Assembly (NCBI RefSeq): GCF_001194135.2
Contig: NC_068983.1
Span: 145,212,366 to 145,251,960, forward strand
Length of the DNA stretch: 39,595 nt
Origin: Octopus bimaculoides
Taxonomy: Eukaryota
Reading direction: 5' to 3'
Part shown: positions 6,017 to 39,090 of the stretch, piece by piece
Numbering within the stretch: the stretch's first letter is position 1
Layout of the letters: the number at the start of each line of letters is the position of its first letter
The notes under the pieces: generated by a model
The model's input: the letters and a program-made list of their open reading frames with translations, nothing else
Databases searched by the model: none
Told to the model about the DNA's origin: nothing
Translations under genes and position numbers: made by a program

Positions 6017-6448
6017 NNNNNNNNNNNNNNNNNNNNNNNNNNNNNNNNNNNNNNNNNNNNNNNNNNNNNNNNNNNNNNNNNNNNNNNNNNNNNNNNNNNN
6101 NNNNNNNNNNNNNNNNNNNNNNNNNNNNNNNNNNNNNNNNNNNNNNNNNNNNNNNNNNNNNNNNNNNNNNNNNNNNNNNNNNNNNNNNNNNNNNNNNNNN
6201 NNNNNNNNNNNNNNNNNNNNNNNNNNNNNNNNNNNNNNNNNNNNNNNNNNNNNNNNNNNNNNNNNNNNNNNNNNNNNNNNNNNNNNNNNNNNNNNNNNNN
6301 NNNNNNNNNNNNNNNNNNNNNNNNNNNNNNNNNNNNNNNNNNNNNNNNNNNNNNNNNNNNNNNNNNNNNNNNNNNNNNNNNNNNNNNNNNNNNNNNNNNN
6401 NNNNNNNNNNNNNNNNNNNNNNNNNNNNNNNNNNNNNNNNNNNNNNNN
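6017..6448. other. Assembly gap (N run); other gaps at about 7977-8241, 15355-15576, 20668-20830, 24313-24423, 27679-27791, 35939-36269
   Basis: Runs of N, mostly next to microsatellites. Confidence 0.99.
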
Positions 6449-7373
6449 TATATATATATAATGTGTGTGTGTATGTGTATATATATATATATATATACAC
6501 ACACACAGAGAAAGAGAGATAGAGTTCTATTATAACGTGGATTGTAAGTTTTAAGAGCGCCATTCAAAACGTCATTTCCCTGGACTGTATCAACGTATCT
6601 TTCGAAAGTCAGCTTGCTAAAATCATCCTTATATCAAATACCTAGAATCTTTGGAAGCTAATCAAACTGCACTAACCTATGGTCACTATTTATTAGGAGC
6701 ACAAAATCATTAGTGAATTGTGTGTGTATGCATGTATGTGTGTGTATGCATGTATGTGTGTGTATGTGTGTGATCACGCGTGCGCGCTGTTTACGTGTTT
6801 TAGATTTTTGCAACATACCTTATTCTACAGAAGACAAGTCGAACTTTACAGACCAAAATTTACAACTACAAAAATACAGCTATGGAGGATCAAAACTTCC
6901 ATGTGAAATGCAGCAGCAGTGAGAAGATAGTGACGATGTGTGAATGTTCGCACTTCATATTTACCCTATCTACAACATCGACTTGTATACTGGAAAATAC
7001 TGTAGTCATGACTCTGTGTCTACACCCAACACACTCAATCCTCAATTGCTGTCAGAGATTCTAGGTAGGCTCTGAACCTGTAAGAGATAGCAATATTACC
7101 TTCCTTAAATAAGAGAAGGGCACAATAATTATATACATTATAAACGTGTCAAATTTTGGCTCAAAGCCAACAATTTCGGGTGAGGAGTAGCACTATAACA
7201 TCGACCCCACCAGGCTCGACTGGTACTTCTTTTATTGATCCCTGAAGAGATGAAAGGTAAAGTTGACCTCAGCAGAATTTGAACTCAGGACGTAAGGTCA
7301 GAAGAAATACCGTCCTGCATTTTTTCCCGGTGCAGTGTCGATTTTGCCAGTTCGCTGTCTTAGTTATATACAG

Positions 7374-7976: not shown

Positions 7977-9042
7977 NNNNNNNNNNNNNNNNNNNNNNNN
8001 NNNNNNNNNNNNNNNNNNNNNNNNNNNNNNNNNNNNNNNNNNNNNNNNNNNNNNNNNNNNNNNNNNNNNNNNNNNNNNNNNNNNNNNNNNNNNNNNNNNN
8101 NNNNNNNNNNNNNNNNNNNNNNNNNNNNNNNNNNNNNNNNNNNNNNNNNNNNNNNNNNNNNNNNNNNNNNNNNNNNNNNNNNNNNNNNNNNNNNNNNNNN
8201 NNNNNNNNNNNNNNNNNNNNNNNNNNNNNNNNNNNNNNNNNATAAAATAAGTACCAGTTGAACACTGGAGTCGATGCAATTGACTTACCTTCTTCGCTCG
8301 AAATTGCTGGCCTTGTGCCGAAATTTGAAATCAATATTAAAGACTTTCTTTTAATTTTAGATCTAAAATGGTATTAGTTGTTTCTTTTGAGAAATCACAT
8401 TTGGGGGCTGACGTAGATAAGTGATATATGATATTCAAGCTTTTCTAAAAACTTTTATCAAATATGGGTGTATAGTTAAGACGCTTACTTTGCAACCACG
8501 TGGTTTTGGATTCAATCTCACTGCGCGGCACTTTGGGCAAATATCTATTAATAAAGCCCCTATCTGATTAATATTTTATGAATGAATGTGATAGACGGAA
8601 ACTTTGTGGAAGCCAGTTATATATGTGTGAGAATGTATGTTTGTGTATGTGTGTGTGAGTGTGTGTAGTGTGTGTGTTTGTCCTTGCCCCACTTGACTTA
8701 TGTTGGTTTGTTTGTGTCCCGTATGTTAGCGGTTCGACAAAAGAGACTGCCGGAATAAGCATCAAACTTTAAAATAAGTGCTGGGGTCGATTCGTTCCAC
8801 TAACCAGATGAAGCATTGCTCCAGTATAGCCGCAGACTAATGACTGAAACAAGTAAGAAAACAGAGTAACTATATTGAAATTTCCTGAACTATGAACCGA
8901 AATTGGATAACGTATTTCTGTCTAATGAGAAGTGACCTTTTGCTCTACAATGTTTATATCGTTTTATTAAAGTAATATATTCTTTTTAAGCCTCTATCGT
9001 CAAAACAGGAAACATTTATTATTATCTTATATTCTTTTTTAG

Positions 9043-13500: not shown

Positions 13501-13769
13501 GGTTAAACTCCATTTTCAGACCCGGGCAAAAAAATTGAAAAAAAAAAATAGTGTAATATGTGTAAAAGAACGTTTAGCAATAGAATATGAAGGAAAAAAT
13601 GCGCGCTGACAAACGGCGCGGGGGTGGGTTCCGAATCCTCTCACCACTCCCCCGTTCGTCGTCGCAAATTTTTTTCTTCATATTCATTTACTACACATTA
13701 TTTTACACTTCTTACGCTATTTTTTTTTTTTTTCAAATTTTTGCCCGGCTCCGAAACTGCGGCTTAACC
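13501..13769. mobile_element. Foldback MITE: nearly the whole 269 bp is one imperfect palindrome
   Basis: 13501-13616 aligns with the reverse complement of 13651-13769; termini GGTTAA...TTAACC. Confidence 0.85.
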
Positions 13770-14062
13770 AATATTTCTTTATACAGAACATTGCTTTGTT
13801 CAAAAGTTTCTTCAATGCAGAATTATATATCGTATATAATTTTACTTATTTCAGTCATGAGACTACGATCATGCTGGGGCACTACCTTGAAGAGATTAGT
13901 CGAACAAATCGATCCCGCCACTTATATATATATATTTTTAAGTCTCTTATTTATTGTATCGGTCTCTTTCGCCAAACTGCTATGTCACGGAGACGTAAAC
14001 AAAGTAACGGGACTAACATTGATTGTCAGACAGTGGAGAGGACAAGCACAAATAGACACACA

Positions 14063-14110
<48 letters not shown>

Positions 14111-14714
14111 TGTGCGTGCGTGTGCGCACGCGACGGGCTTCCACTCAGTTTCTGTCTACCAAATTCACTCACAAGATATTGATCGATTCGTGGCTATAGC
14201 AAAAGACATTCTTTGAAGGCGGATGCAAAGCAAACTTCTTAACCAGACAGCCGTGCCTTACCAACTAGTAAGCAGTGTGAATCTTTTGCTTTCCTTTACC
14301 TCCCACCTGATCTTACTCAGAAAATTACAATTTACTTAAGTATAGCTTAGTAAGTACGATTCTTTCATGTAGATCAAGGGTGATAAAGACGTTTCAGGCT
14401 AGTTTGTCTTAGATACACGCCCTTAATTCTAGGTCGTCAGTACTGTTCCATTGTCTATATGATTTATGAGATTCTCCACGTTGATGTAGGAGTATCTAAC
14501 TAGATAAATAAATAATGTATGGATATAATTTATTATCTAGTTTTTGAATATCTTTAAGGTCATCAGGAGGGACACGTGATATTTCTTAGGATTCTAAATC
14601 ATTTGATGGTTCCAATCAATGTGTAATACGAATATTAGTGCGTATATTTAAAATGGTAAATAATACTTTTACCAGAAGCTGCACACGCACACACACATAC
14701 ATAGATGCACGTAT

Positions 14715-14946: not shown

Positions 14947-16686
14947 GAACTAACTGTTACTTTCTCAGATGCCGCACTGAATTTTGTCAGTGAACAGGTC
15001 GCGATTTCAAAGCGACGAAAATATTTTGATAAATTAAATTTAAATGTTGAAGTGAATCTAACGGTTTTCGTGTGTTTTTAAATGGCTTATAAACTCCTTC
15101 TATACTGCAATTGTTTTTGTTTCAGCACACGATCTCAAATCAAGTCACTTGCTATGCAAGTACATCTCCGTAATTCCGAAAGCTTGAGCCAGGCTACCAA
15201 AACTCTGAGGAAAGCCGTTACTTGTTGCTTGGGAAAAATAACAGCTAAGCAACAGCTTCATTTCATTAGACACTAGACTTAATCCCTTTGTCTGTCCTTG
15301 TTTGTCTCATCTATGTTTAGCCCCCTGTGGGCAATAAAGAAATACACATATATANNNNNNNNNNNNNNNNNNNNNNNNNNNNNNNNNNNNNNNNNNNNNN
15401 NNNNNNNNNNNNNNNNNNNNNNNNNNNNNNNNNNNNNNNNNNNNNNNNNNNNNNNNNNNNNNNNNNNNNNNNNNNNNNNNNNNNNNNNNNNNNNNNNNNN
15501 NNNNNNNNNNNNNNNNNNNNNNNNNNNNNNNNNNNNNNNNNNNNNNNNNNNNNNNNNNNNNNNNNNNNNNNNNNNNATAAACGAAGATGACCAATTTATT
15601 AATAAATAATTGTTAACTTCCTTATCTCCATTTTCTTTTCTTCTTTTAACTGGATATAAACTATATGCTTAATATACACCTACTGTTTTAAGACTGAACG
15701 CAGAATGGTGTGGCTAGGAAGCGAGCTTTTTACCACTGCCCTACACACATACATTGTCTTTTGAAGATGCCACAAATAGCAAACAAAGAAGGGTTCCGAG
15801 TTAAATTCTTTTCTGTATTTAGATCTAACCCTTTCTTTTTTTTATTCGGAGCTACTGGTGCCATCCTACACATAAAGAAATCAAGGGAAGAAAAACCTAG
15901 TATAAAGGCTAAATACTAAATAAAGGTTGCTCGACATTTACAGAAGAAAATTCGAACGGATTGTAATTCTGAGCGGGAATTATTGGAGAAACATTTTAAC
16001 GGCAATCCTGGTAGCTGGGGATACAGGTAGATACGTCTGACTTGGATGGAGATGGTATACAGTTTGCCTGTTTAGGTAAATTTGTAGAGCAGTAATTTTA
16101 ATGCGTTGGTTAAAGAAGTCTATAAGCTCTCTTAATGCACTGTGAACCGGGCAAAGCGACTGAATCAAACATGAATTAAGAAAAATCAATGGGTGTTAAC
16201 AAATAGGGATATTATCTACTATAATCACTGTTTCTGATTTAGGTGGAAGTAGTTAAGTCAACAGCAGTACCTAATTCAAGCTTTATTTTATCGACACCGG
16301 TGGAATGAAAAGCAAAATTGTGGTCCATGAGATTTGGGCTCGGAACCTTAAAGTGCCGGAACAAATATTCGCAAGGTGTCTTTTCTTGCTTTTTCATTTT
16401 TTTTTTTCAATACTCTAACGACTCTACCAATCTACGGGTTTTTTTTTTTCTTTTTACAGAAATAACAACAACAATGAAAGAAATGCCATTTTATATATTT
16501 TGTGTTAAAATACATTTTATTACTATTTGTTCTCTTTAAAGAATTTTAGTTATTTTCTATGTTAGTATAAAGTTATTAATGTTAAAGTGACCTTGTTGTT
16601 TTTATAATTGGTATGGTAACAATAGTGCTTATTTCTTGTCAAAGAAAAGAAAAGAGAGATTCTATTTAGAATGAGAAAACATGAAA

Positions 16687-16692
16687 TTTATT
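16687..16692 (-). terminator. Candidate polyadenylation signal of the secreted-protein gene
   Basis: AATAAA on the minus strand ~300 nt after the stop codon; in AT-rich DNA this is weak evidence. Confidence 0.4.
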
Positions 16693-16995
16693 AGTCACGG
16701 CCTAACTATACATAATAGGGTTTTCCGGATATTCAGCTAACTGCATTCCGTATTTTCCAGCATACAAGTCGACTTACTATATAGTGTAAACATGTAGAGT
16801 AAATATTCAAACATCGTCACTATCTTTCCAAATTCTGATGCATTTCACATGGAATTTTTGAGTATATAAGTCAACCTCTCTTCTTTGGCTGTAAACTTTG
16901 CTCTAAAATATTCGACTTGTATGCCAAAAAATGCAGTATTTCAAACTACAAAACATGAATGGTATTGTTGGCACGGAGAATATTAGAATCTTGTT

Positions 16996-17598
16996 TTAAG
17001 TACCAGCTCTTCCTTTCGGTGCTCCGTCACGACTTTTAGGTGTAAGGGGTTTTATAGTTGAAGTAATTCCTGTTGCAGGAATACTTTTATGAAGCCAATA
17101 GACATACATCCCTTGGATGATTGTAACATATACAGGACGAAATTTCTGCGGATAATACTTCGTCGAATACATGTTCCTCAATGTGTCTTCAGAAACTCTC
17201 AGTAAATCCTTGAACTTTAACACAATATCGAAATCCGAAAGCACTCTAGGACAGATTAAAAAATAATCTTCGTTTTTCATGTTACCAAAGTATTTAAGAT
17301 GTGGTCTCATTCGTAGTGGAAATTGACGAAGAGAGACAATATTCTTCATTGGTGAAATTTCGCATTCCCAGTATGCTAATTTGTATCTCGACTCGTTACT
17401 TTCCTCGGATGAGCTTATGAAGGATTCTAACGATTCCTCTGATGTTCTGCCACCGAAGCGATATACATTCCTATTTGCATATCTACCAGTTAAGCGTGTC
17501 CTGACCTCTTCAGATGAATCAGCACCAACAATAGTTTGAACTGATAGAAAATATGTCAATAATAACTCAAGCAATGCTACGAATTTGAAAGACTTCAT
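16996..17598 (-). CDS. Uncharacterised secreted protein, 200 aa, single coding exon; signal peptide, acidic Ser/Glu cluster, two Cys
   Basis: Longest non-repetitive ORF in the window. First ATG at 17598 (the track start at 17646 is TTG). MKSFKFVALLELLLTYFLSVQTIVG resembles a signal peptide. Candidate acceptor (pyrimidine tract + AG at 17740-17739) ~140 nt upstream; AATAAA at 16692-16687. No family recognised. Confidence 0.75.
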   Translation of the reverse strand: MKSFKFVALLELLLTYFLSVQTIVGADSSEEVRTRLTGRYANRNVYRFGGRTSEESLESFISSSEESNESRYKLAYWECEISPMKNIVSLRQFPLRMRPHLKYFGNMKNEDYFLICPRVLSDFDIVLKFKDLLRVSEDTLRNMYSTKYYPQKFRPVYVTIIQGMYVYWLHKSIPATGITSTIKPLTPKSRDGAPKGRAGT

Positions 17599-17738
17599 AG
17601 CAACGGTTGAGAATCTCAATGGAAATCGGAAAAATAACTTAACCAACGAAAGCTAATGAGTGAGATATCCCAAGGTTTAGGTTTGAAGGTGTTTGAAGAA
17701 GTCAGACAGAAAAGCACTGCGAATTTTCTTTCTTCAAG

Positions 17739-17762
17739 CTGAAATATAAGAGAAAATAATAT
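17739..17762 (-). promoter_or_regulatory. Candidate 3' splice site of a 5'-UTR intron of the secreted-protein gene
   Basis: Minus strand ATTATTTTCTCTTATATTTCAG|CTTGAAG. Confidence 0.55.
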
Positions 17763-19440
17763 CTTATTTTAATGTTACAGGTTTACAGTCAGTCGTCATG
17801 TTTAAACTTCAAACGAATAATATTGAGTCAACAGAAACATTAAAGTGTTTAGATTGCCTTCCCACGTTTTTCTATTTCCGACAGGTCAATTTCGATTTTC
17901 CTTCTTCCAGTTTCAATAAAATAGGTACCAGAATGTACTAAGATTGGTTCAGTCGACAATACCCGCCACACCAACCCAGCACAACATGACCTTGTCTCGG
18001 ACGAATGAATCCATAAGTTCCTTGTGATCTTCATTTATTCTCCATTAAGATCTGAGTTGATTACGTGAATGATACCATGACGTGAATGATACCATGACGA
18101 TGCCACATTGTCAGACGTGAACTAAGTTTCCAGTTAGGGGAACTAAGCTAGTGAAAGTTACATATCTTTGCCAAGAATATAGTGTCTCAATGCAAACTGG
18201 AGACTCTTCGGTCGATAAGCCACATCTTGTCAATTCAGCCGGCTGTAACTTTTAGAGTAGCACAAGCATTTATATTTTACTACAGCACATCCTCGCGCAC
18301 GCAAATGCACACACAATCACACACGGTCTCATATACACTCGCGCACACATCCAAAGGACAAATAAAACACTGAGCCCGGGAAAACAAGTAATGTCTGGTG
18401 TCAGTAGAAATAATAGTTTCTAATTTAGGCAGAAGGCGAGCAATTTTGAGGGGAGGAGTCAGTTGATTACATTGAACCCAGCACTTGCTGATACTTAATT
18501 TTATTGATTCGGGAAAGATGAAAAGCAAGGTTGACCGCAGCGGGTTTTGACCTCTGAACGAAAGGAGATGCAACAGAATACCGCTAGGAATTTAGCCGTG
18601 GCTTTTTATCAATTCTTCCAATCCATTCCAGTATGTTAACAGAAATATAGCATCTTGTATGCTGTCGATTCTGACTAGCCCAGTACTTGTAGCTTGCTAC
18701 TTATTTGATAAACTTTGATAGAAGTAATGTCAAAGACAACAGATTAAATAAAATATTTTTTTTTACAAAATAAAGTAAATAAAATAATTTTACGAATTTT
18801 GTTTTCATCCACGCTTATGCACATTTACTGTTACAATAAGTAAACATCATTGCTAATAATAATATAAAACAATAAATCAATGAAGTTAATGACTCAGACT
18901 GTAACCACCATAAAACAAAAAAAAATAGTTAAGTTTGAGTCAATGTATTTAATGTCATAAACAAATAAAAATCTAATTAGAAATATTTATGTAGTGGGTA
19001 AAACACATTAGCTTTAAGACTAATATTGTTTTAACTATTTCAAGCACGACACACATTTATGAAAATTTCTTGTTTCATTTATTCTCGGCGAAACAAACTT
19101 TGAGTGGAGTGCCCTTCACCATATCCAGCCTGCTCGTAAATGGCATAACTACCAAAACATATAGTAGACATGAGAAAAAGCAATCCTGATGAACGGAGCC
19201 TGTGATTCGAAACGGTTCCGATGGTGACCATATAAGGTGTCCACCAAAGAGATGGTGTTGAGCTTTGTAATGATTCAAGTTCAATGATGAAAGTGAAACC
19301 GGCTGTCCTTAAGGCGGTTTCCTCTTTGAATAATGGCTGATTCCATTGAATGTTATATCTAAAGTGATCAGAGATCCACCAAAGTTGGATCTAACCTCAC
19401 TCTTTCTGTTATATACCACACAATACCAAGGTTATTATGG

Positions 19441-20465: not shown

Positions 20466-22499
20466 TATATGTATATATGCTGGTTTTAACAATCACTTTG
20501 CCAAAATTGTCAACTCTGTAATTCGGTCTTTAAATTGTTTCTATTATGTCGATCGTGTTCTTTCTCATCAATATTACCAATTCTTGGTTCACACAAACTG
20601 AAATTTTTACCGTCTGCTGTTAGTTGTTGTAGATATCACCAAAACCAGTGACGAACTTGTCCTGATANNNNNNNNNNNNNNNNNNNNNNNNNNNNNNNNN
20701 NNNNNNNNNNNNNNNNNNNNNNNNNNNNNNNNNNNNNNNNNNNNNNNNNNNNNNNNNNNNNNNNNNNNNNNNNNNNNNNNNNNNNNNNNNNNNNNNNNNN
20801 NNNNNNNNNNNNNNNNNNNNNNNNNNNNNNTATATATAGTTCGTACGGCAGAATATCTAATTCTGGTGATTTGCCCCTCGCAAGGCTAAAGGACACATCC
20901 GCTTGCTCCACAGTCAATTGACACACCCGCTACATTCGCTTTTGAAATTGGTTTTCCATACAACATTGTATCTTTTGCTGAGAGTTACGGCAAACCATTA
21001 TCTGGTCCGTCAAAGACCAGTATGTGACTTCGTTGCCATCCTGCATTTCTGTCACTTGGCATGTCATGCCCTCTTGTTTCACAGCATGTACCTTAACCCG
21101 AACACTGCCTCTTTTGTGGTTCGCGTCGAAGAAATGGTCAAGGGCTCTTCACGTCGTTAATTCGTTATATGCTATTCCTCTTCTAGTCGACCGACTATTT
21201 TTTTAATCTGCTGTTCTCTGCTACTACATTTTGCTAAAACCAACGAACATCATTTCGTTAATTTAAGCATAAAAGTAGCAATCATTATAATAATGTTTTT
21301 CTTTATTTTATAATTTAGGTACAAGGCTAGCAATTTTGATATTATTGACCGTTGTAAATATTTTACAGTTTTCTTTTCTCTAAACAGCGTGACCGCCACA
21401 ACATCTGCATAGAATATAAATAACCTTGATCTGTAAGTACATTTGGGTAGCAACAGAGTATCTAACTGAAGAAAAATGCTGTTTTTTAACGTAAAAGATC
21501 TTATAGTAGAAGAAATGAAAGAAACATATACATAATGAAAATACAAACAACGAAAATAAAAAGTAAAACTAAAATAAGAATATTATATGTAAAAATATTG
21601 AGAATATAAATCTCAAAGATAGACGTAGTGCCTGCAAAACAATATCAAATTACAACTAAATGGATTCCCAAGAAGATCAAATCTCAAGATAATTATACTC
21701 CGAGATAATATAGATCAAAATGGTAAATCACAAATATACTGATTGAAATATGGACTAGAGTAAGGGTGAGAAAATTTCTTAAAATAAATATCTGCGATAA
21801 TCTAAAGGTTAAAGATCTTACGGTTCAATGAAAGACATTTCAATATATAATACTTAGCGATGAAATGACAGCAGGAATAAAATAAGTACAAAATTGACTG
21901 TTGCAGGCTTATTGGAAACAGAGGTGGATGTAATATTCCACAAAATACATCAAATAAACACAACCACAATAATAACAAAGCCGAGTAGGGACATCCTTAA
22001 AGTTTCTGATATACGAAAATCTAATTCTAAGTTAACAACAATATAGAAAAAGATTTAAAAAATAAAGACCGCTCAATTTTTAATAAAATCAACGAAAAAA
22101 AGAAAGAAAGAAAGAAAGAAAGAAAAGGAGAAGCAAACACTACAAAAAAGGAACCCGAAATCATAGAGTACCTAAAGCAAGGGATCTTCGCTAGGTCACA
22201 AAGAATTTATTGTTATGAAATGTGAAACAGTTCTTTAATCAAAACAAAAAGTTCGGTTCCACCCCAAAAACGATTTCATAAACAGAAATTAATTCAACAC
22301 CAACACCAAAAGAAGTGAAATATTTGGGTGTGGAGTATGATGAGTGTACGGATTATCACAGGAGAGAATGTTCAAAAACAGTGGTAAAAAAAATTATCAT
22401 AAAATATCTACTAAAAACTCATAATATCTAGTAAACAATAAAATAAAGCAAAGGAAAATAGTTACCAAACCTGCACAAAACAAAAGACTGTCCTCTGTT

Positions 22500-37985: not shown

Positions 37986-39090
37986 TAGATTGGACAAAAA
38001 CTGAATTACCAAAGCTAGACAGAATAACTAGGAAGGAATTCAATATGAATGGAGGACTCCACCCAGGAGTAGCAAGATTATACTTACCTAGAAAGGAAGG
38101 CGGAAGAAGTTAACTCCACGCAGTCTTCTACTGCGTTGAGTTAGCTTGAGTAGTTATGGACTGCTATGTAGGTAATTGTGAAGGCAGTTTATTAAAATCT
38201 ACTAGAGTCAGAGCAAGACAAAGGGAAACCAAAAACCTAAACGAAGTTAAAAACCAGAAAAAGAACAGAAATTATCTAACTGGCAGGAGGTGTTGCACGG
38301 TAGATTTCAAAATTTCAGAAAATAGTAGTAGTGAGACATGGCTACGGTTACAGAAGGGAAAGCGGAAAAGGGAGACAGAAAGTTTGTTAGTAGCTGCACA
38401 GGATCAAGCATTAAGGACTAATTGGATAAAAGCCGAGATAGACAAAACCCAAGTAGATTCCCAATGTAGGTTATGCAAATCAAAAGACGAAAGCGTTACT
38501 CATGTAGTAAGTGAATGTAGCATGCTGGCACAGAAAGAATACAGGAAAAGATATGACAACCTAGGGAGAGTAATCCCCTGGGAGTTATGTAGAAAGTTAG
38601 GATTTGAACATACAAATAAATGGTATGAACATGAACCTAGTAAAGTACTAGAAAGTAAGAAATGCAAGATTTGTGGACTTCAACATTCAAGAAGGCTTGA
38701 TTTAGTAGTAGCAGATAAAGAGAATAGAAAGTGCCAAATGATGAAAAAATCAATATATATGAGAGGTATGTAAAAAAAATAGCGAAGTACCAGGACCCAA
38801 CTATTGAATTACAGAGACTATGGAAATTGCGGATAAAGTGTATTCCAGTAGTTATAAATGCGTTGGGAACTATCCCTAAAGATCTGAACAGATGAATAGA
38901 GGAAATAGGCATAAAACCTAGTTTAGTACAGCTCCGGAAAATAGTATTATTGGGGACAGCCAGGATACTTAGGAGCGTTCTTGGCATCTAAAGTTACTTG
39001 TTGTAGCCCAAAGTTAGGATTTTTTTCTTTTCCAACAGTTTAATCTGTTATGTGTATATGAAATAATAATAATAATAATAATAATAATAA
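37985..39090 (+). mobile_element. 5'-truncated R4/Dong-type non-LTR retrotransposon (zinc knuckle + restriction-like endonuclease), disrupted
   Basis: LDWTKTELPKLDRITRK..GLHP..ARLYLPRKEGGR; ETESLLVAAQDQALRTN; CRLCKSKDESVTHVVSEC (CCHC); EY.KRYD; RLDLVVAD; IPVVINALG...LLGTARILRSVLGI*; (AAT)n on both sides. Confidence 0.92.

What the first reader, a model, noticed from the sequence alone, without database searches (positions are those of the whole stretch)
16996..17598. Orphan secreted protein with a casein-like phosphoserine cluster
Seen: 200-aa ORF with a signal-peptide-like N-terminus, then seven S-x-E motifs in residues 28-69 (DSSEE, TSEESLE, ISSSEESNE), an N-E-S glycosylation sequon, a ~100-aa aromatic-rich region with two Cys, and a Pro/Thr-rich tail; acceptor and polyA candidates flank it. 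Known: S-x-E is the Fam20C secretory kinase consensus, and SSSEE is the calcium-phosphate-binding cluster of caseins and related SCPP proteins. Inference: a lineage-specific, convergently evolved secreted phosphoprotein (mineral or metal binding, gland secretion, egg coat, adhesive or statolith matrix). I recognise no family.
Basis: partly seen in the sequence, partly recalled or inferred. Interest (0 to 1): 0.72.

Follow-up and report, generated by a model that had tools for sequence, protein, structure and literature searches.

The report
Orphan secreted protein with serine-glutamate clusters
This is a real, evolutionarily maintained 200-codon gene with no detectable relatives beyond one sister species; it probably encodes a small secreted protein whose N-terminal arm carries statherin/casein-like serine-glutamate clusters, but secretion, phosphorylation and expression remain untested.

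Summary
An uninterrupted 200-codon ORF lies on the minus strand at 16996-17598. It has one N-terminal hydrophobic segment, seven S-x-E motifs in residues 28-69, two Cys and a basic Pro/Thr tail.

It is a maintained coding gene. A collinear 1.37-kb contig from a second species carries an 81%-identical ORF of exactly 200 codons. Flanks there have 20 indels; the ORF has no net indel and no stop. Amino-acid changes are fewer than neutral (39 against 50.3, P about 0.001).

It is an orphan. Pfam, PDB sequences, 5.8 billion clustered proteins, an exhaustive HMMER scan of 1.84 billion representatives, JGI metagenomes and IMG/VR gave only itself and that orthologue. The protein is already in UniRef, name masked.

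The casein reading is only partly supported:
- Selection sits on the core (residues 101-175, omega about 0.23).
- The acidic arm evolves neutrally overall (omega about 1.2).
- Five of seven S-x-E sites are kept.
- The mature protein is basic (pI 9.6), and its coding sequence is a single exon, unlike SCPP genes.

The predicted mature N-terminus, VGA|DSSEE-x3-R-x2-GRY, mimics human statherin. Secretion, phosphorylation, expression and taxon were not testable here. Interest is modest.

The parts
16996..17598 (-). Complete coding sequence, 200 codons plus TAA, uninterrupted
   Evidence: The orthologous ORF has identical length in L001-L006.
17521..17598 (-). Residues 1-26, predicted signal peptide MKSFKFVALLELLLTYFLSVQTIVGA, with cleavage predicted after V-G-A
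   Evidence: It is the only hydrophobic segment. The V-x-A|D site is kept in the orthologue as V-R-A|D. Prediction is heuristic only; no SignalP.
17383..17520 (-). Residues 27-72, Ser/Glu-rich arm, probably disordered, pI 5.0
   Evidence: Omega is about 1.2. It has the lowest pLDDT in the full-length model.
17506..17520 (-). Cluster 1, DSSEE, at the predicted mature N-terminus
   Evidence: Identical in the orthologue. Same five residues as the mature N-terminus of statherin.
17431..17445 (-). Cluster 2, TSEES (SSEES in the orthologue)
17392..17415 (-). Cluster 3, SSSEESNE. SSSEES is conserved; the NE and the N-E-S sequon are not.
   Evidence: SSSEES also occurs in beta-casein 1-25.
17074..17382 (-). 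Residues 73-175, basic aromatic-rich core with C79 and C116. This is the part under the strongest constraint.
   Evidence: Residues 101-175 are 91% identical, with omega about 0.23 and no neutral simulation out of 3000 reaching the observed count (P<0.0004). The core-only AlphaFold2 model gives alpha/beta elements at pLDDT 55.9, pTM 0.49.
16999..17073 (-). Residues 176-200, basic Pro/Thr tail, predicted disordered
   Evidence: The last 16 residues are identical in the orthologue.
17599..17738 (-). Conserved leader with no upstream ATG. An in-frame TAG lies 57 nt upstream of the ATG, and there is a purine at -3.
   Evidence: It aligns with L001.
17739..17758 (-). TATTTTCTCTTATATTTCAG: either a 3' splice acceptor of a 5'-UTR intron or a TATA-like element. 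Undecided.
   Evidence: Conserved in L001. L001 is collinear with the window through it, so no splicing is visible there.
16687..16692 (-). AATAAA, 303 nt after the stop codon. The context GTGACTAATAAATTTCA is conserved in the orthologue.
16745..16939 (.). MITE-like inverted repeat inside the presumed 3' UTR, present at the same place in the orthologue
   Evidence: 28-nt arms, 79% complementary. Searches show a second copy at 6890-7000.

Best explanation
This is a taxonomically restricted protein-coding gene whose coding sequence is a single exon. I split the explanation into what is shown and what is inferred, with a probability for each inferred step.

Shown:
- The reading frame is maintained by selection in at least two species.
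- Constraint is concentrated on residues 101-175.

Inferred:
- (1) The N-terminal 26 residues act as a cleavable signal peptide, cut after V-G-A. This releases a roughly 20-kDa basic protein that begins DSSEE (about 0.65).
- (2) In the Golgi, an S-x-E-directed secretory kinase of the Fam20C type phosphorylates the three conserved clusters DSSEE, (T/S)SEES and SSSEES (about 0.45). Hierarchical S-x-pS priming may occur within SSSEES.
- (3) This would turn a near-neutral flexible arm (9 acidic, 7 basic residues) into a strongly anionic one, tethered to a cationic alpha/beta core and tail (21 Lys/Arg against 10 Asp/Glu). The phospho-arm would bind Ca2+, a mineral surface or a cationic partner, including the protein's own basic domain. 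The conserved core would supply a second, specific binding function (about 0.25).

The tissue and the biological role (saliva, egg cement, statolith matrix, adhesive) are unknown. The overall confidence of 0.45 refers to the chain up to and including step (2).
For: Orthologue. A collinear contig from a second species has an ORF of exactly 603 nt that is 81% identical at the protein level.

Coding constraint:
- Flanks carry 20 indel events in 643 bp, 18 of them not multiples of three. The ORFs align ungapped at equal length. P(no frameshift) is about 5e-8 at the flank rate.
- P(no premature stop and ATG kept) is 0.023.
- There are 39 amino-acid differences against 50.3 +/- 3.4 expected under neutrality, P=0.0012.
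- Nei-Gojobori dN/dS is 0.415. Spectrum-aware omega is 0.54 overall (P=0.005) and 0.23 for residues 101-175.

Start codon. There is no upstream ATG within 200 nt in the window or 167 nt in the orthologue. An in-frame stop lies upstream in both species, and both have a purine at -3.

Secretion. There is a single N-terminal hydrophobic segment, and the V-x-A|D site is conserved.

S-x-E clusters:
- Seven in the window and six in the orthologue, against 1.2-1.7 expected.
- Five of seven sites are kept and one is gained.
- S/D/E residues of the arm are conserved 16/19, against 15/27 for the other arm residues (one-sided P=0.04).

Precedent. Fam20C and S-x-E phosphosites exist in molluscs: pearl-oyster fam20C (PMC5824888) and the Lottia shell phosphoproteome, where 16 of 46 sites fit the Fam20C motif (PMC4094399). 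The motifs are identical to the mineral-binding N-termini of statherin and beta-casein (PMC8541499).
Against: - No expression evidence of any kind was obtainable. The orthologue contigs look genomic: they are collinear through the putative acceptor and past AATAAA, and they end in a TA microsatellite.
- The ORF as a whole is no more conserved in substitutions (87.9%) than the aligned flank columns (about 88%). Constraint shows only in the pattern of changes.
- The acidic arm has omega about 1.2, and two S-x-E sites are lost.
The P=0.0007 used boundaries chosen after seeing the alignment.
- The h-region holds a Glu (E11) in the window species.
- No signal-peptide predictor was run.
- Presence of a Fam20C orthologue in this organism was not tested.
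- Structure models are of low confidence.
Confidence: 0.45

Rival explanations
1. It is secreted, but the Ser/Glu arm is an incidental low-complexity spacer or propeptide. The conserved basic core (residues 73-175) alone carries the function, for example as a ligand, binding protein or small enzyme-like domain. Phosphorylation plays no role.
For: Selection is concentrated on residues 101-175 (omega 0.23), while the arm has omega about 1.2. Two of seven S-x-E sites and the N-glycosylation sequon are not conserved. The core-only model shows regular alpha/beta elements.
Against: The contiguous runs DSSEE, SEES and SSSEES are identical in both species while half of the surrounding arm residues differ. 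S-before-E ordering is about fourfold above what composition gives.
Confidence: 0.2
2. The protein is not secreted. The N-terminal hydrophobic segment is an uncleaved signal anchor (type II membrane protein) or a buried helix. The acidic Ser clusters are then CK2-type sites, or unmodified.
For: The h-region is long (about 15-19 residues; hydropathy 1.94 over a 19-residue window) and contains a Glu in the window species. S28, T52, S62 and S63 also fit S/T-x-x-D/E. No predictor was run.
Against: The short basic n-region (K2, K5) followed by a small-residue V-x-A site is conserved in both species. It matches the arrangement ...I-G-A|DSSEE of statherin. The mature statherin N-terminus is documented; its signal part is from my memory.
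Confidence: 0.13
3. It is not a functional gene. It is an open frame preserved by chance between two closely related genomes and picked up by automatic annotation.
For: There is no expression evidence. The substitution rate in the ORF equals that of the flanks. Only two species are known to have it. The window holds other long ORFs that are artefacts.
Against: The joint improbability of no frameshift (about 5e-8 at the flank indel rate), no stop (0.023) and a deficit of amino-acid changes (0.0012). Core omega is 0.23, with no neutral simulation out of 3000 reaching the observed count. ATG, stop position and a leader free of upstream ATGs are all conserved.
Confidence: 0.07
4. It is a prohormone or neuropeptide precursor: signal peptide, acidic spacer and peptides released at basic sites (for example ...YRFGGR, with Gly as amide donor).
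For: It has a signal-like N-terminus and an acidic spacer. G-G-R at residues 49-51 is conserved, and the window species has Y-R-F-G-G-R.
Against: The window protein has no KR/RR/KK/RK dibasic site. The 'RF' is N-L in the orthologue. The most conserved part is a 100-residue core with regular secondary structure, which is not what short repeated peptides would show.
Confidence: 0.05
5. It is an ORF derived from a transposon or a virus.
For: The window is rich in transposon fragments, and a MITE-like element lies 57 nt past the stop codon.
Against: It is single copy. There is no paralogue in the window and only two clusters among 5.8 billion proteins. Pfam, PHROGs, IMG/VR and BFVD gave nothing. 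It sits at the same collinear position in both species.
Confidence: 0.03

Closest known systems
Human statherin (STATH), a salivary SCPP phosphoprotein
   Same: Both have a signal peptide ending in (I/V)-G-A, immediately followed by DSSEE, then basic residues with the spacing DSSEE-x3-R-x2-G-R-(F/Y). Eight of the first 15 mature residues are identical in both octopus-like species. In statherin the two Ser are phosphorylated, and this N-terminus carries the control of calcium phosphate precipitation (PMC8541499).
   Different: Pairwise BLASTP gives E=2e-5 for that single comparison only, over 41 residues. This is not significant in any database search, and I picked statherin after the fact (the signal part of the statherin sequence is from my memory). 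Statherin is 43 residues long, disordered, Pro/Gln/Tyr-rich and mammalian, and by established knowledge its gene has several exons. Here there is a 174-residue basic protein with a conserved, probably folded core, encoded in one exon. The resemblance is convergence or chance, not homology.
Caseins (beta, alpha-s) and the wider vertebrate SCPP family
   Same: SSSEES is the same hexapeptide as in the beta-casein phosphopeptide ...ESLSSSEESITR. Both have clusters of S-x-E after a signal peptide.
   Different: There is no sequence relationship. The mature pI is 9.6, whereas caseins are acidic. There are only three short clusters. The SCPP exon structure is absent. A constrained core is present.
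Mollusc secreted phosphoproteins that are substrates of Fam20C-type kinases (shell matrix proteins)
   Same: Both are lineage-restricted secreted proteins with S-x-E sites. Fam20C is present and functional in molluscs (PMC5824888; PMC4094399).
   Different: Those proteins were found in a mineral matrix and their phosphosites were measured. Nothing is measured here, and no mineral or tissue context is known.
Lineage-specific ('novel') genes of octopods
   Same: It is a gene without relatives outside a narrow clade. Whitelaw et al. 2020 (PMC7656900) report that novel gene families are a large part of octopod genomes.
   Different: That paper treats such genes in bulk, and this gene is not named there. 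The octopod origin of the window was not established with the tools.

Membership tests
Vertebrate SCPP family (caseins, statherin and relatives) | Signal peptide followed closely by one or more S-x-E phosphorylation motifs | tested here: met
   DSSEE begins at the predicted +1 position. There are seven S-x-E motifs in residues 28-69. The signal peptide is judged by heuristics only.
Vertebrate SCPP family (caseins, statherin and relatives) | Characteristic gene structure (established knowledge): untranslated first exon, signal peptide on exon 2, S-x-E on a separate small exon, phase-0 introns | tested here: not met
   Signal peptide, all clusters, core and stop codon lie in one uninterrupted ORF in both species.
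Vertebrate SCPP family (caseins, statherin and relatives) | Descent from the SPARC/SPARCL1 lineage, seen as sequence relationship or location in the SCPP gene cluster | tested here: not met
   No relative other than the orthologue among 5.8 billion clusters or 1.84 billion representatives. No neighbouring gene is recognisable in the 39.6-kb window.
Vertebrate SCPP family (caseins, statherin and relatives) | Intrinsically disordered, low-complexity, mostly acidic or Pro/Gln-rich mature protein | tested here: not met
   Mature pI is 9.6. The 103-residue core is aromatic-rich and 91% conserved over residues 101-175. Regular alpha/beta elements are predicted, at low confidence.
Substrates of the Golgi kinase Fam20C | Entry into the secretory pathway | tested here: inconclusive
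   The N-terminus has a basic n-region, a hydrophobic h-region and a V-x-A site, conserved in both species. No dedicated predictor or experiment.
Substrates of the Golgi kinase Fam20C | S-x-E/pS consensus at the acceptor serine | tested here: met
   Seven sites in the window protein and six in the orthologue; five are shared.
Substrates of the Golgi kinase Fam20C | A Fam20C orthologue in the same organism | not tested
   Only literature for other molluscs. A literature search for cephalopods found nothing relevant.
Substrates of the Golgi kinase Fam20C | Phosphate demonstrated on the serines | not testable with these tools
   Needs phosphoproteomics or an in vitro kinase assay.
Neuropeptide / prohormone precursors | Conserved peptides flanked by dibasic or furin-type cleavage sites | tested here: not met
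   There is no KR/RR/KK/RK in the window protein. K-K-R occurs in the orthologue only. The candidate YRFGGR is YNLGGR in the orthologue.
Transposon- or virus-encoded ORFs | Multiple copies, or similarity to transposase, polymerase or viral protein families | tested here: not met

The most novel reading that the evidence does not exclude
A shell-less mollusc has independently evolved a statherin/casein-type calcium-handling phosphoprotein. The same mature N-terminus (DSSEE-x3-R-x2-GR-aromatic) that anchors statherin to calcium phosphate is here fused to a new basic folded domain. It would be used in a secretion that meets mineral or needs Ca2+-bridged cohesion, for example saliva used in drilling prey shells, statolith matrix or egg-string cement. 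That would be residue-level convergence between a mammalian salivary protein and an invertebrate orphan.
Probability: 0.1. Interest if true: 0.65.

Novelty: new variant of a known kind. Interest (0 to 1): 0.33.

Why it matters
If the reading is right, this is a clean example of a young, lineage-restricted gene. Its short linear motifs (signal-peptide cleavage site plus Ser-Glu clusters) have converged on those of vertebrate mineral-binding phosphoproteins, while the rest of the protein is a new fold. It would give a tractable handle on secretory-kinase biology in cephalopods, where none is described. It would also point to a possible calcium- or surface-binding component of an octopod secretion. 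As it stands, it is one uncharacterised orphan among the many that such genomes contain, so the practical value lies in prioritising it for an expression look-up.

Tried and rejected
- **Family searches.** Pfam on the full protein, the orthologue and the core gave only DUF1512 at 12-16 bits (cut-off 25) and DUF7204 at 12.9 bits. I treat these as chance. PHROGs gave nothing. PDB sequence search gave nothing at E up to 10.
- **Structure.** AlphaFold2 on the full length with the two-sequence alignment gave pLDDT 37.8 and is unusable. The core-only model gave pLDDT 55.9, pTM 0.49. Its Foldseek searches of PDB and BFVD gave no match better than E=0.2, with TM-scores for the top-ranked matches of about 0.3 or less.
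- **More orthologues.** The exhaustive HMMER search, JGI metagenomes and IMG/VR gave none.
- **Expression or source of the window protein.** No contig with exactly this product is on record. The cluster look-up shows only 'UniRef, MetaClust', with names masked.
- **Species and library type of runs SRR11869384-94.** Literature searches for the accession found nothing relevant.
- **Literature search for peptide strings of the protein.** None found.
- **Taxon through a retroelement ORF of the window.** Only unnamed ENA hits at about 50% identity, so the organism remains unverified.
- **Second membrane segment.** I considered residues 155-169 (PVYVTIIQGMYVYWL) as a transmembrane helix and rejected it. 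No window outside the N-terminus ranks among the top hydropathy windows.
- **Alignment artefact.** A gapped global alignment placed two compensating +1/-1 gap pairs and one single-base gap at the stop-codon boundary inside the ORF coordinates. I treat these as scoring artefacts, because the ungapped ORFs are of equal length and 81% identical in frame.

Full report
**1. What is there**

The window looks like a draft animal scaffold. It is 30-40% G+C, dense in microsatellites, has seven runs of N and carries transposon fragments. It has no tRNA and no Rfam match.

On the minus strand, ATG 17598 to TAA 16996 encodes 200 residues. The protein splits into four parts:

| Residues | Description |
|---|---|
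| 1-26 | Hydrophobic N-terminus, MKSFKFVALLELLLTYFLSVQTIVGA |
| 27-72 | Ser/Glu-rich arm, DSSEEVRTRLTGRYANRNVYRFGGRTSEESLESFISSSEESNESRY |
| 73-175 | Basic, aromatic-rich core with C79 and C116 |
| 176-200 | Basic Pro/Thr tail |

- There are seven S-x-E motifs, against 1.2-1.7 expected from shuffles that keep composition (0 of 20,000 reach 7).
- The motif enrichment therefore comes from residue order (Ser before Glu), not just from composition.
- An ATG ORF of 200 codons was never reached in 100 Markov simulations of the window (maximum 177).
- ORF length alone is still weak evidence. The window also has a 209-codon ORF running through a GT repeat and a 205-codon retroelement ORF.

**2. Is it a gene?**

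A search of 5.8 billion protein clusters found the protein itself plus one other protein, P0002. P0002 is 200 aa long and 81% identical. It is encoded on six roughly 1.37-kb contigs assembled from runs SRR11869384-94.

These contigs are collinear with window 17820-16575, covering both flanks and the ORF, so the locus is orthologous. The contigs look genomic rather than transcript-derived:
- They run straight through the putative splice acceptor.
- They continue past the AATAAA.
- They stop in a TA microsatellite.

They therefore give conservation evidence, not expression evidence.

The two ORFs align without gaps at equal length, with 73 differences in 603 nt (21, 20 and 32 by codon position). 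The flanks carry 20 indel events in 643 bp, 18 of them not multiples of three. At that rate, the chance of no frameshift in 603 bp is about 5e-8. Even if half of the flank events were alignment artefacts, it would be about 1e-4.

I placed 73 substitutions at random with the observed spectrum:
- The start codon was kept and no stop arose in 2.3% of trials.
- The expected number of amino-acid differences was 50.3 +/- 3.4, against 39 observed (P=0.0012).

Selection estimates:

| Region | Omega |
|---|---|
| Whole ORF, Nei-Gojobori | 0.415 |
| Whole ORF, spectrum-aware | 0.54 (P=0.005) |
| Core 101-175 | 0.23 (0 of 3000 simulations as extreme) |
| Tail 176-200 | 0.35 |
| Arm 27-72 | about 1.2 |

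Both species have an in-frame stop upstream of the ATG. Neither has an upstream ATG within 167-200 nt, and both have a purine at -3. A conserved AATAAA lies about 300 nt downstream of the stop.

One caution. The total substitution rate in the ORF (12.1%) equals that of aligned flank columns (12.2%), and the synonymous proportion (0.21) exceeds the flank divergence. Constraint is therefore visible in the pattern of change, not in the amount. The flanks may be constrained UTRs.

My conclusion is that this is a maintained protein-coding gene (about 0.85-0.9).

**3. Is it an orphan?**

Yes, as far as these tools can see.
- Pfam gave only sub-threshold noise.
- PHROGs, PDB sequences, JGI metagenomes and IMG/VR gave nothing.
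- An exhaustive HMMER scan of 1.84 billion representatives with the two-sequence profile returned only the query's own cluster.
- There is no paralogue in the window.

The exact protein is already held in UniRef, so it exists as an annotated entry; its name is masked here.

How well cephalopod genomes are covered by these collections is unclear. The window's own transposon ORF found no close copies. 'Two species only' is therefore a lower bound on its distribution.

**4. How it probably works**

The only hydrophobic segment is N-terminal. It is preceded by K2 and K5 and followed by V-G-A|D (V-R-A|D in the orthologue). These are the classic features of a cleavable signal peptide. No predictor was available, and E11 in the h-region is a blemish.

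Cleavage after A26 would expose DSSEE as the mature N-terminus. The contiguous runs DSSEE, SEES and SSSEES are identical in both species, while about half of the other arm residues differ (15/15 against 16/31, P=0.0007). That test used boundaries chosen after seeing the alignment. Two more neutral tests give weaker results:
- All S/D/E residues of the arm against the other arm residues: 16/19 against 15/27, P=0.04.

Five of the seven S-x-E sites are kept, two are lost and one is gained.

S-x-E is the consensus of the Golgi kinase Fam20C. Fam20C and S-x-E phosphosites are documented in molluscs (PMC5824888; PMC4094399).

Unphosphorylated, the arm is near neutral (9 acidic, 7 basic residues). 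The core plus tail is strongly basic (21 Lys/Arg against 10 Asp/Glu; pI 9.8), and the mature protein has pI 9.6. Phosphorylation of six to eight serines would create a polyanionic arm on a cationic body. Such an arrangement could bind Ca2+ or mineral, or drive electrostatic self-association or partner association.

The core-only AlphaFold2 model (pLDDT 55.9, pTM 0.49) suggests a small alpha/beta domain followed by a disordered tail. It has no structural neighbour in PDB or BFVD. The full-length model is useless.

**5. Comparison with known proteins**

Published sequences (PMC8541499) give mature statherin as DSSEEKFLRRIGRFG... and the beta-casein phosphopeptide as ...ESLSSSEESITR. The window protein reads VGA|DSSEEVRTRLTGRY... 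and ...ESFISSSEESNE.

With statherin it shares DSSEE-x3-R-x2-G-R-(F/Y): 8 of the first 15 mature residues, in both species. It also shares, from my memory of the precursor, a signal peptide ending in -GA. Pairwise BLASTP gives E=2e-5 for that one comparison. That is far from significant for a database search, and I chose statherin after the fact.

Membership of the SCPP family fails on three counts:
- Gene structure: the coding sequence is one exon.
- There is no sequence relationship.
- Composition: the protein is basic, with a constrained core.

It may work like an SCPP N-terminus, but it is not one.

**6. Rivals**

| Rival | Confidence |
|---|---|
| Secreted, but the arm is incidental | 0.20 |
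| Signal anchor or intracellular protein, with CK2-type or no phosphorylation | 0.13 |
| Non-functional ORF | 0.07 |
| Prohormone | 0.05 |
| Transposon- or virus-derived | 0.03 |

**7. Verdict**

The solid result is a conserved orphan gene whose selected part is the core, not the acidic arm. The phosphoprotein idea is plausible and testable but unproven. Interest is modest (0.33). The most novel reading still open is true convergence on the mineral-binding N-terminus of statherin, in a secretion of a shell-less mollusc (about 0.1).

Noticed in passing
window 16745-16939 (arms 16745-16772 and 16912-16939); second copy 6890-7000; L001 about 955-1170: A MITE-like inverted-repeat element (28-nt arms, 79% complementary, 139 nt apart) begins 57 nt after the stop codon, inside the presumed 3' UTR. 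It is at the same place in the orthologue, so its insertion predates the split of the two species. A second copy (81% over 112 nt, opposite orientation) lies 10 kb away.
   Followed up: partly
window 18060-18093: A 17-nt unit is tandemly repeated twice, 94-100% identical depending on register (ATGACGTGAATGATACC; it contains a TGACGT core). It lies about 460 nt upstream of the ATG on the gene's strand. It is outside the part covered by the orthologue contig, so its conservation is unknown.
   Followed up: no
window 17820 / L001 1-68: Collinearity between the window and the orthologue contigs ends abruptly at window 17820. All six contigs from different runs start at the same base 68 nt further on. 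This suggests a repeat boundary or an insertion there in the other species.
   Followed up: no
window 16575-17820: The synonymous difference proportion in the ORF (0.21) is higher than the flank divergence (0.12). Either the flanks are constrained UTRs or the small sample and transition bias inflate the synonymous estimate.
   Followed up: partly
window 38156-38773 (+) and 31415-31807 (-): Transposon remnants. One is a 205-aa ORF with a weak zf-RVT match (retroelement tail; relatives at about 50% identity in ENA assemblies). The other is a 130-aa ORF that looks mariner-like by eye but has no Pfam match.
   Followed up: partly
window 13587-14216 (+): A 209-aa ATG ORF, the longest in the window, runs through a (GT)n microsatellite. 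It has low-complexity, hydrophobic content and is most likely an artefact of the repeat.
   Followed up: no
window 25000-27000: Strong positive GC skew (0.24-0.41), coinciding with (AGAC)n and (AC)n/(TG)n microsatellite arrays.
   Followed up: no
window 6017-6448, 7977-8241, 15355-15576, 20668-20830, 24313-24423, 27679-27791, 35939-36269: Seven runs of N (111-432 nt). The window is a gapped draft scaffold, so features near these gaps may be incomplete.
   Followed up: no
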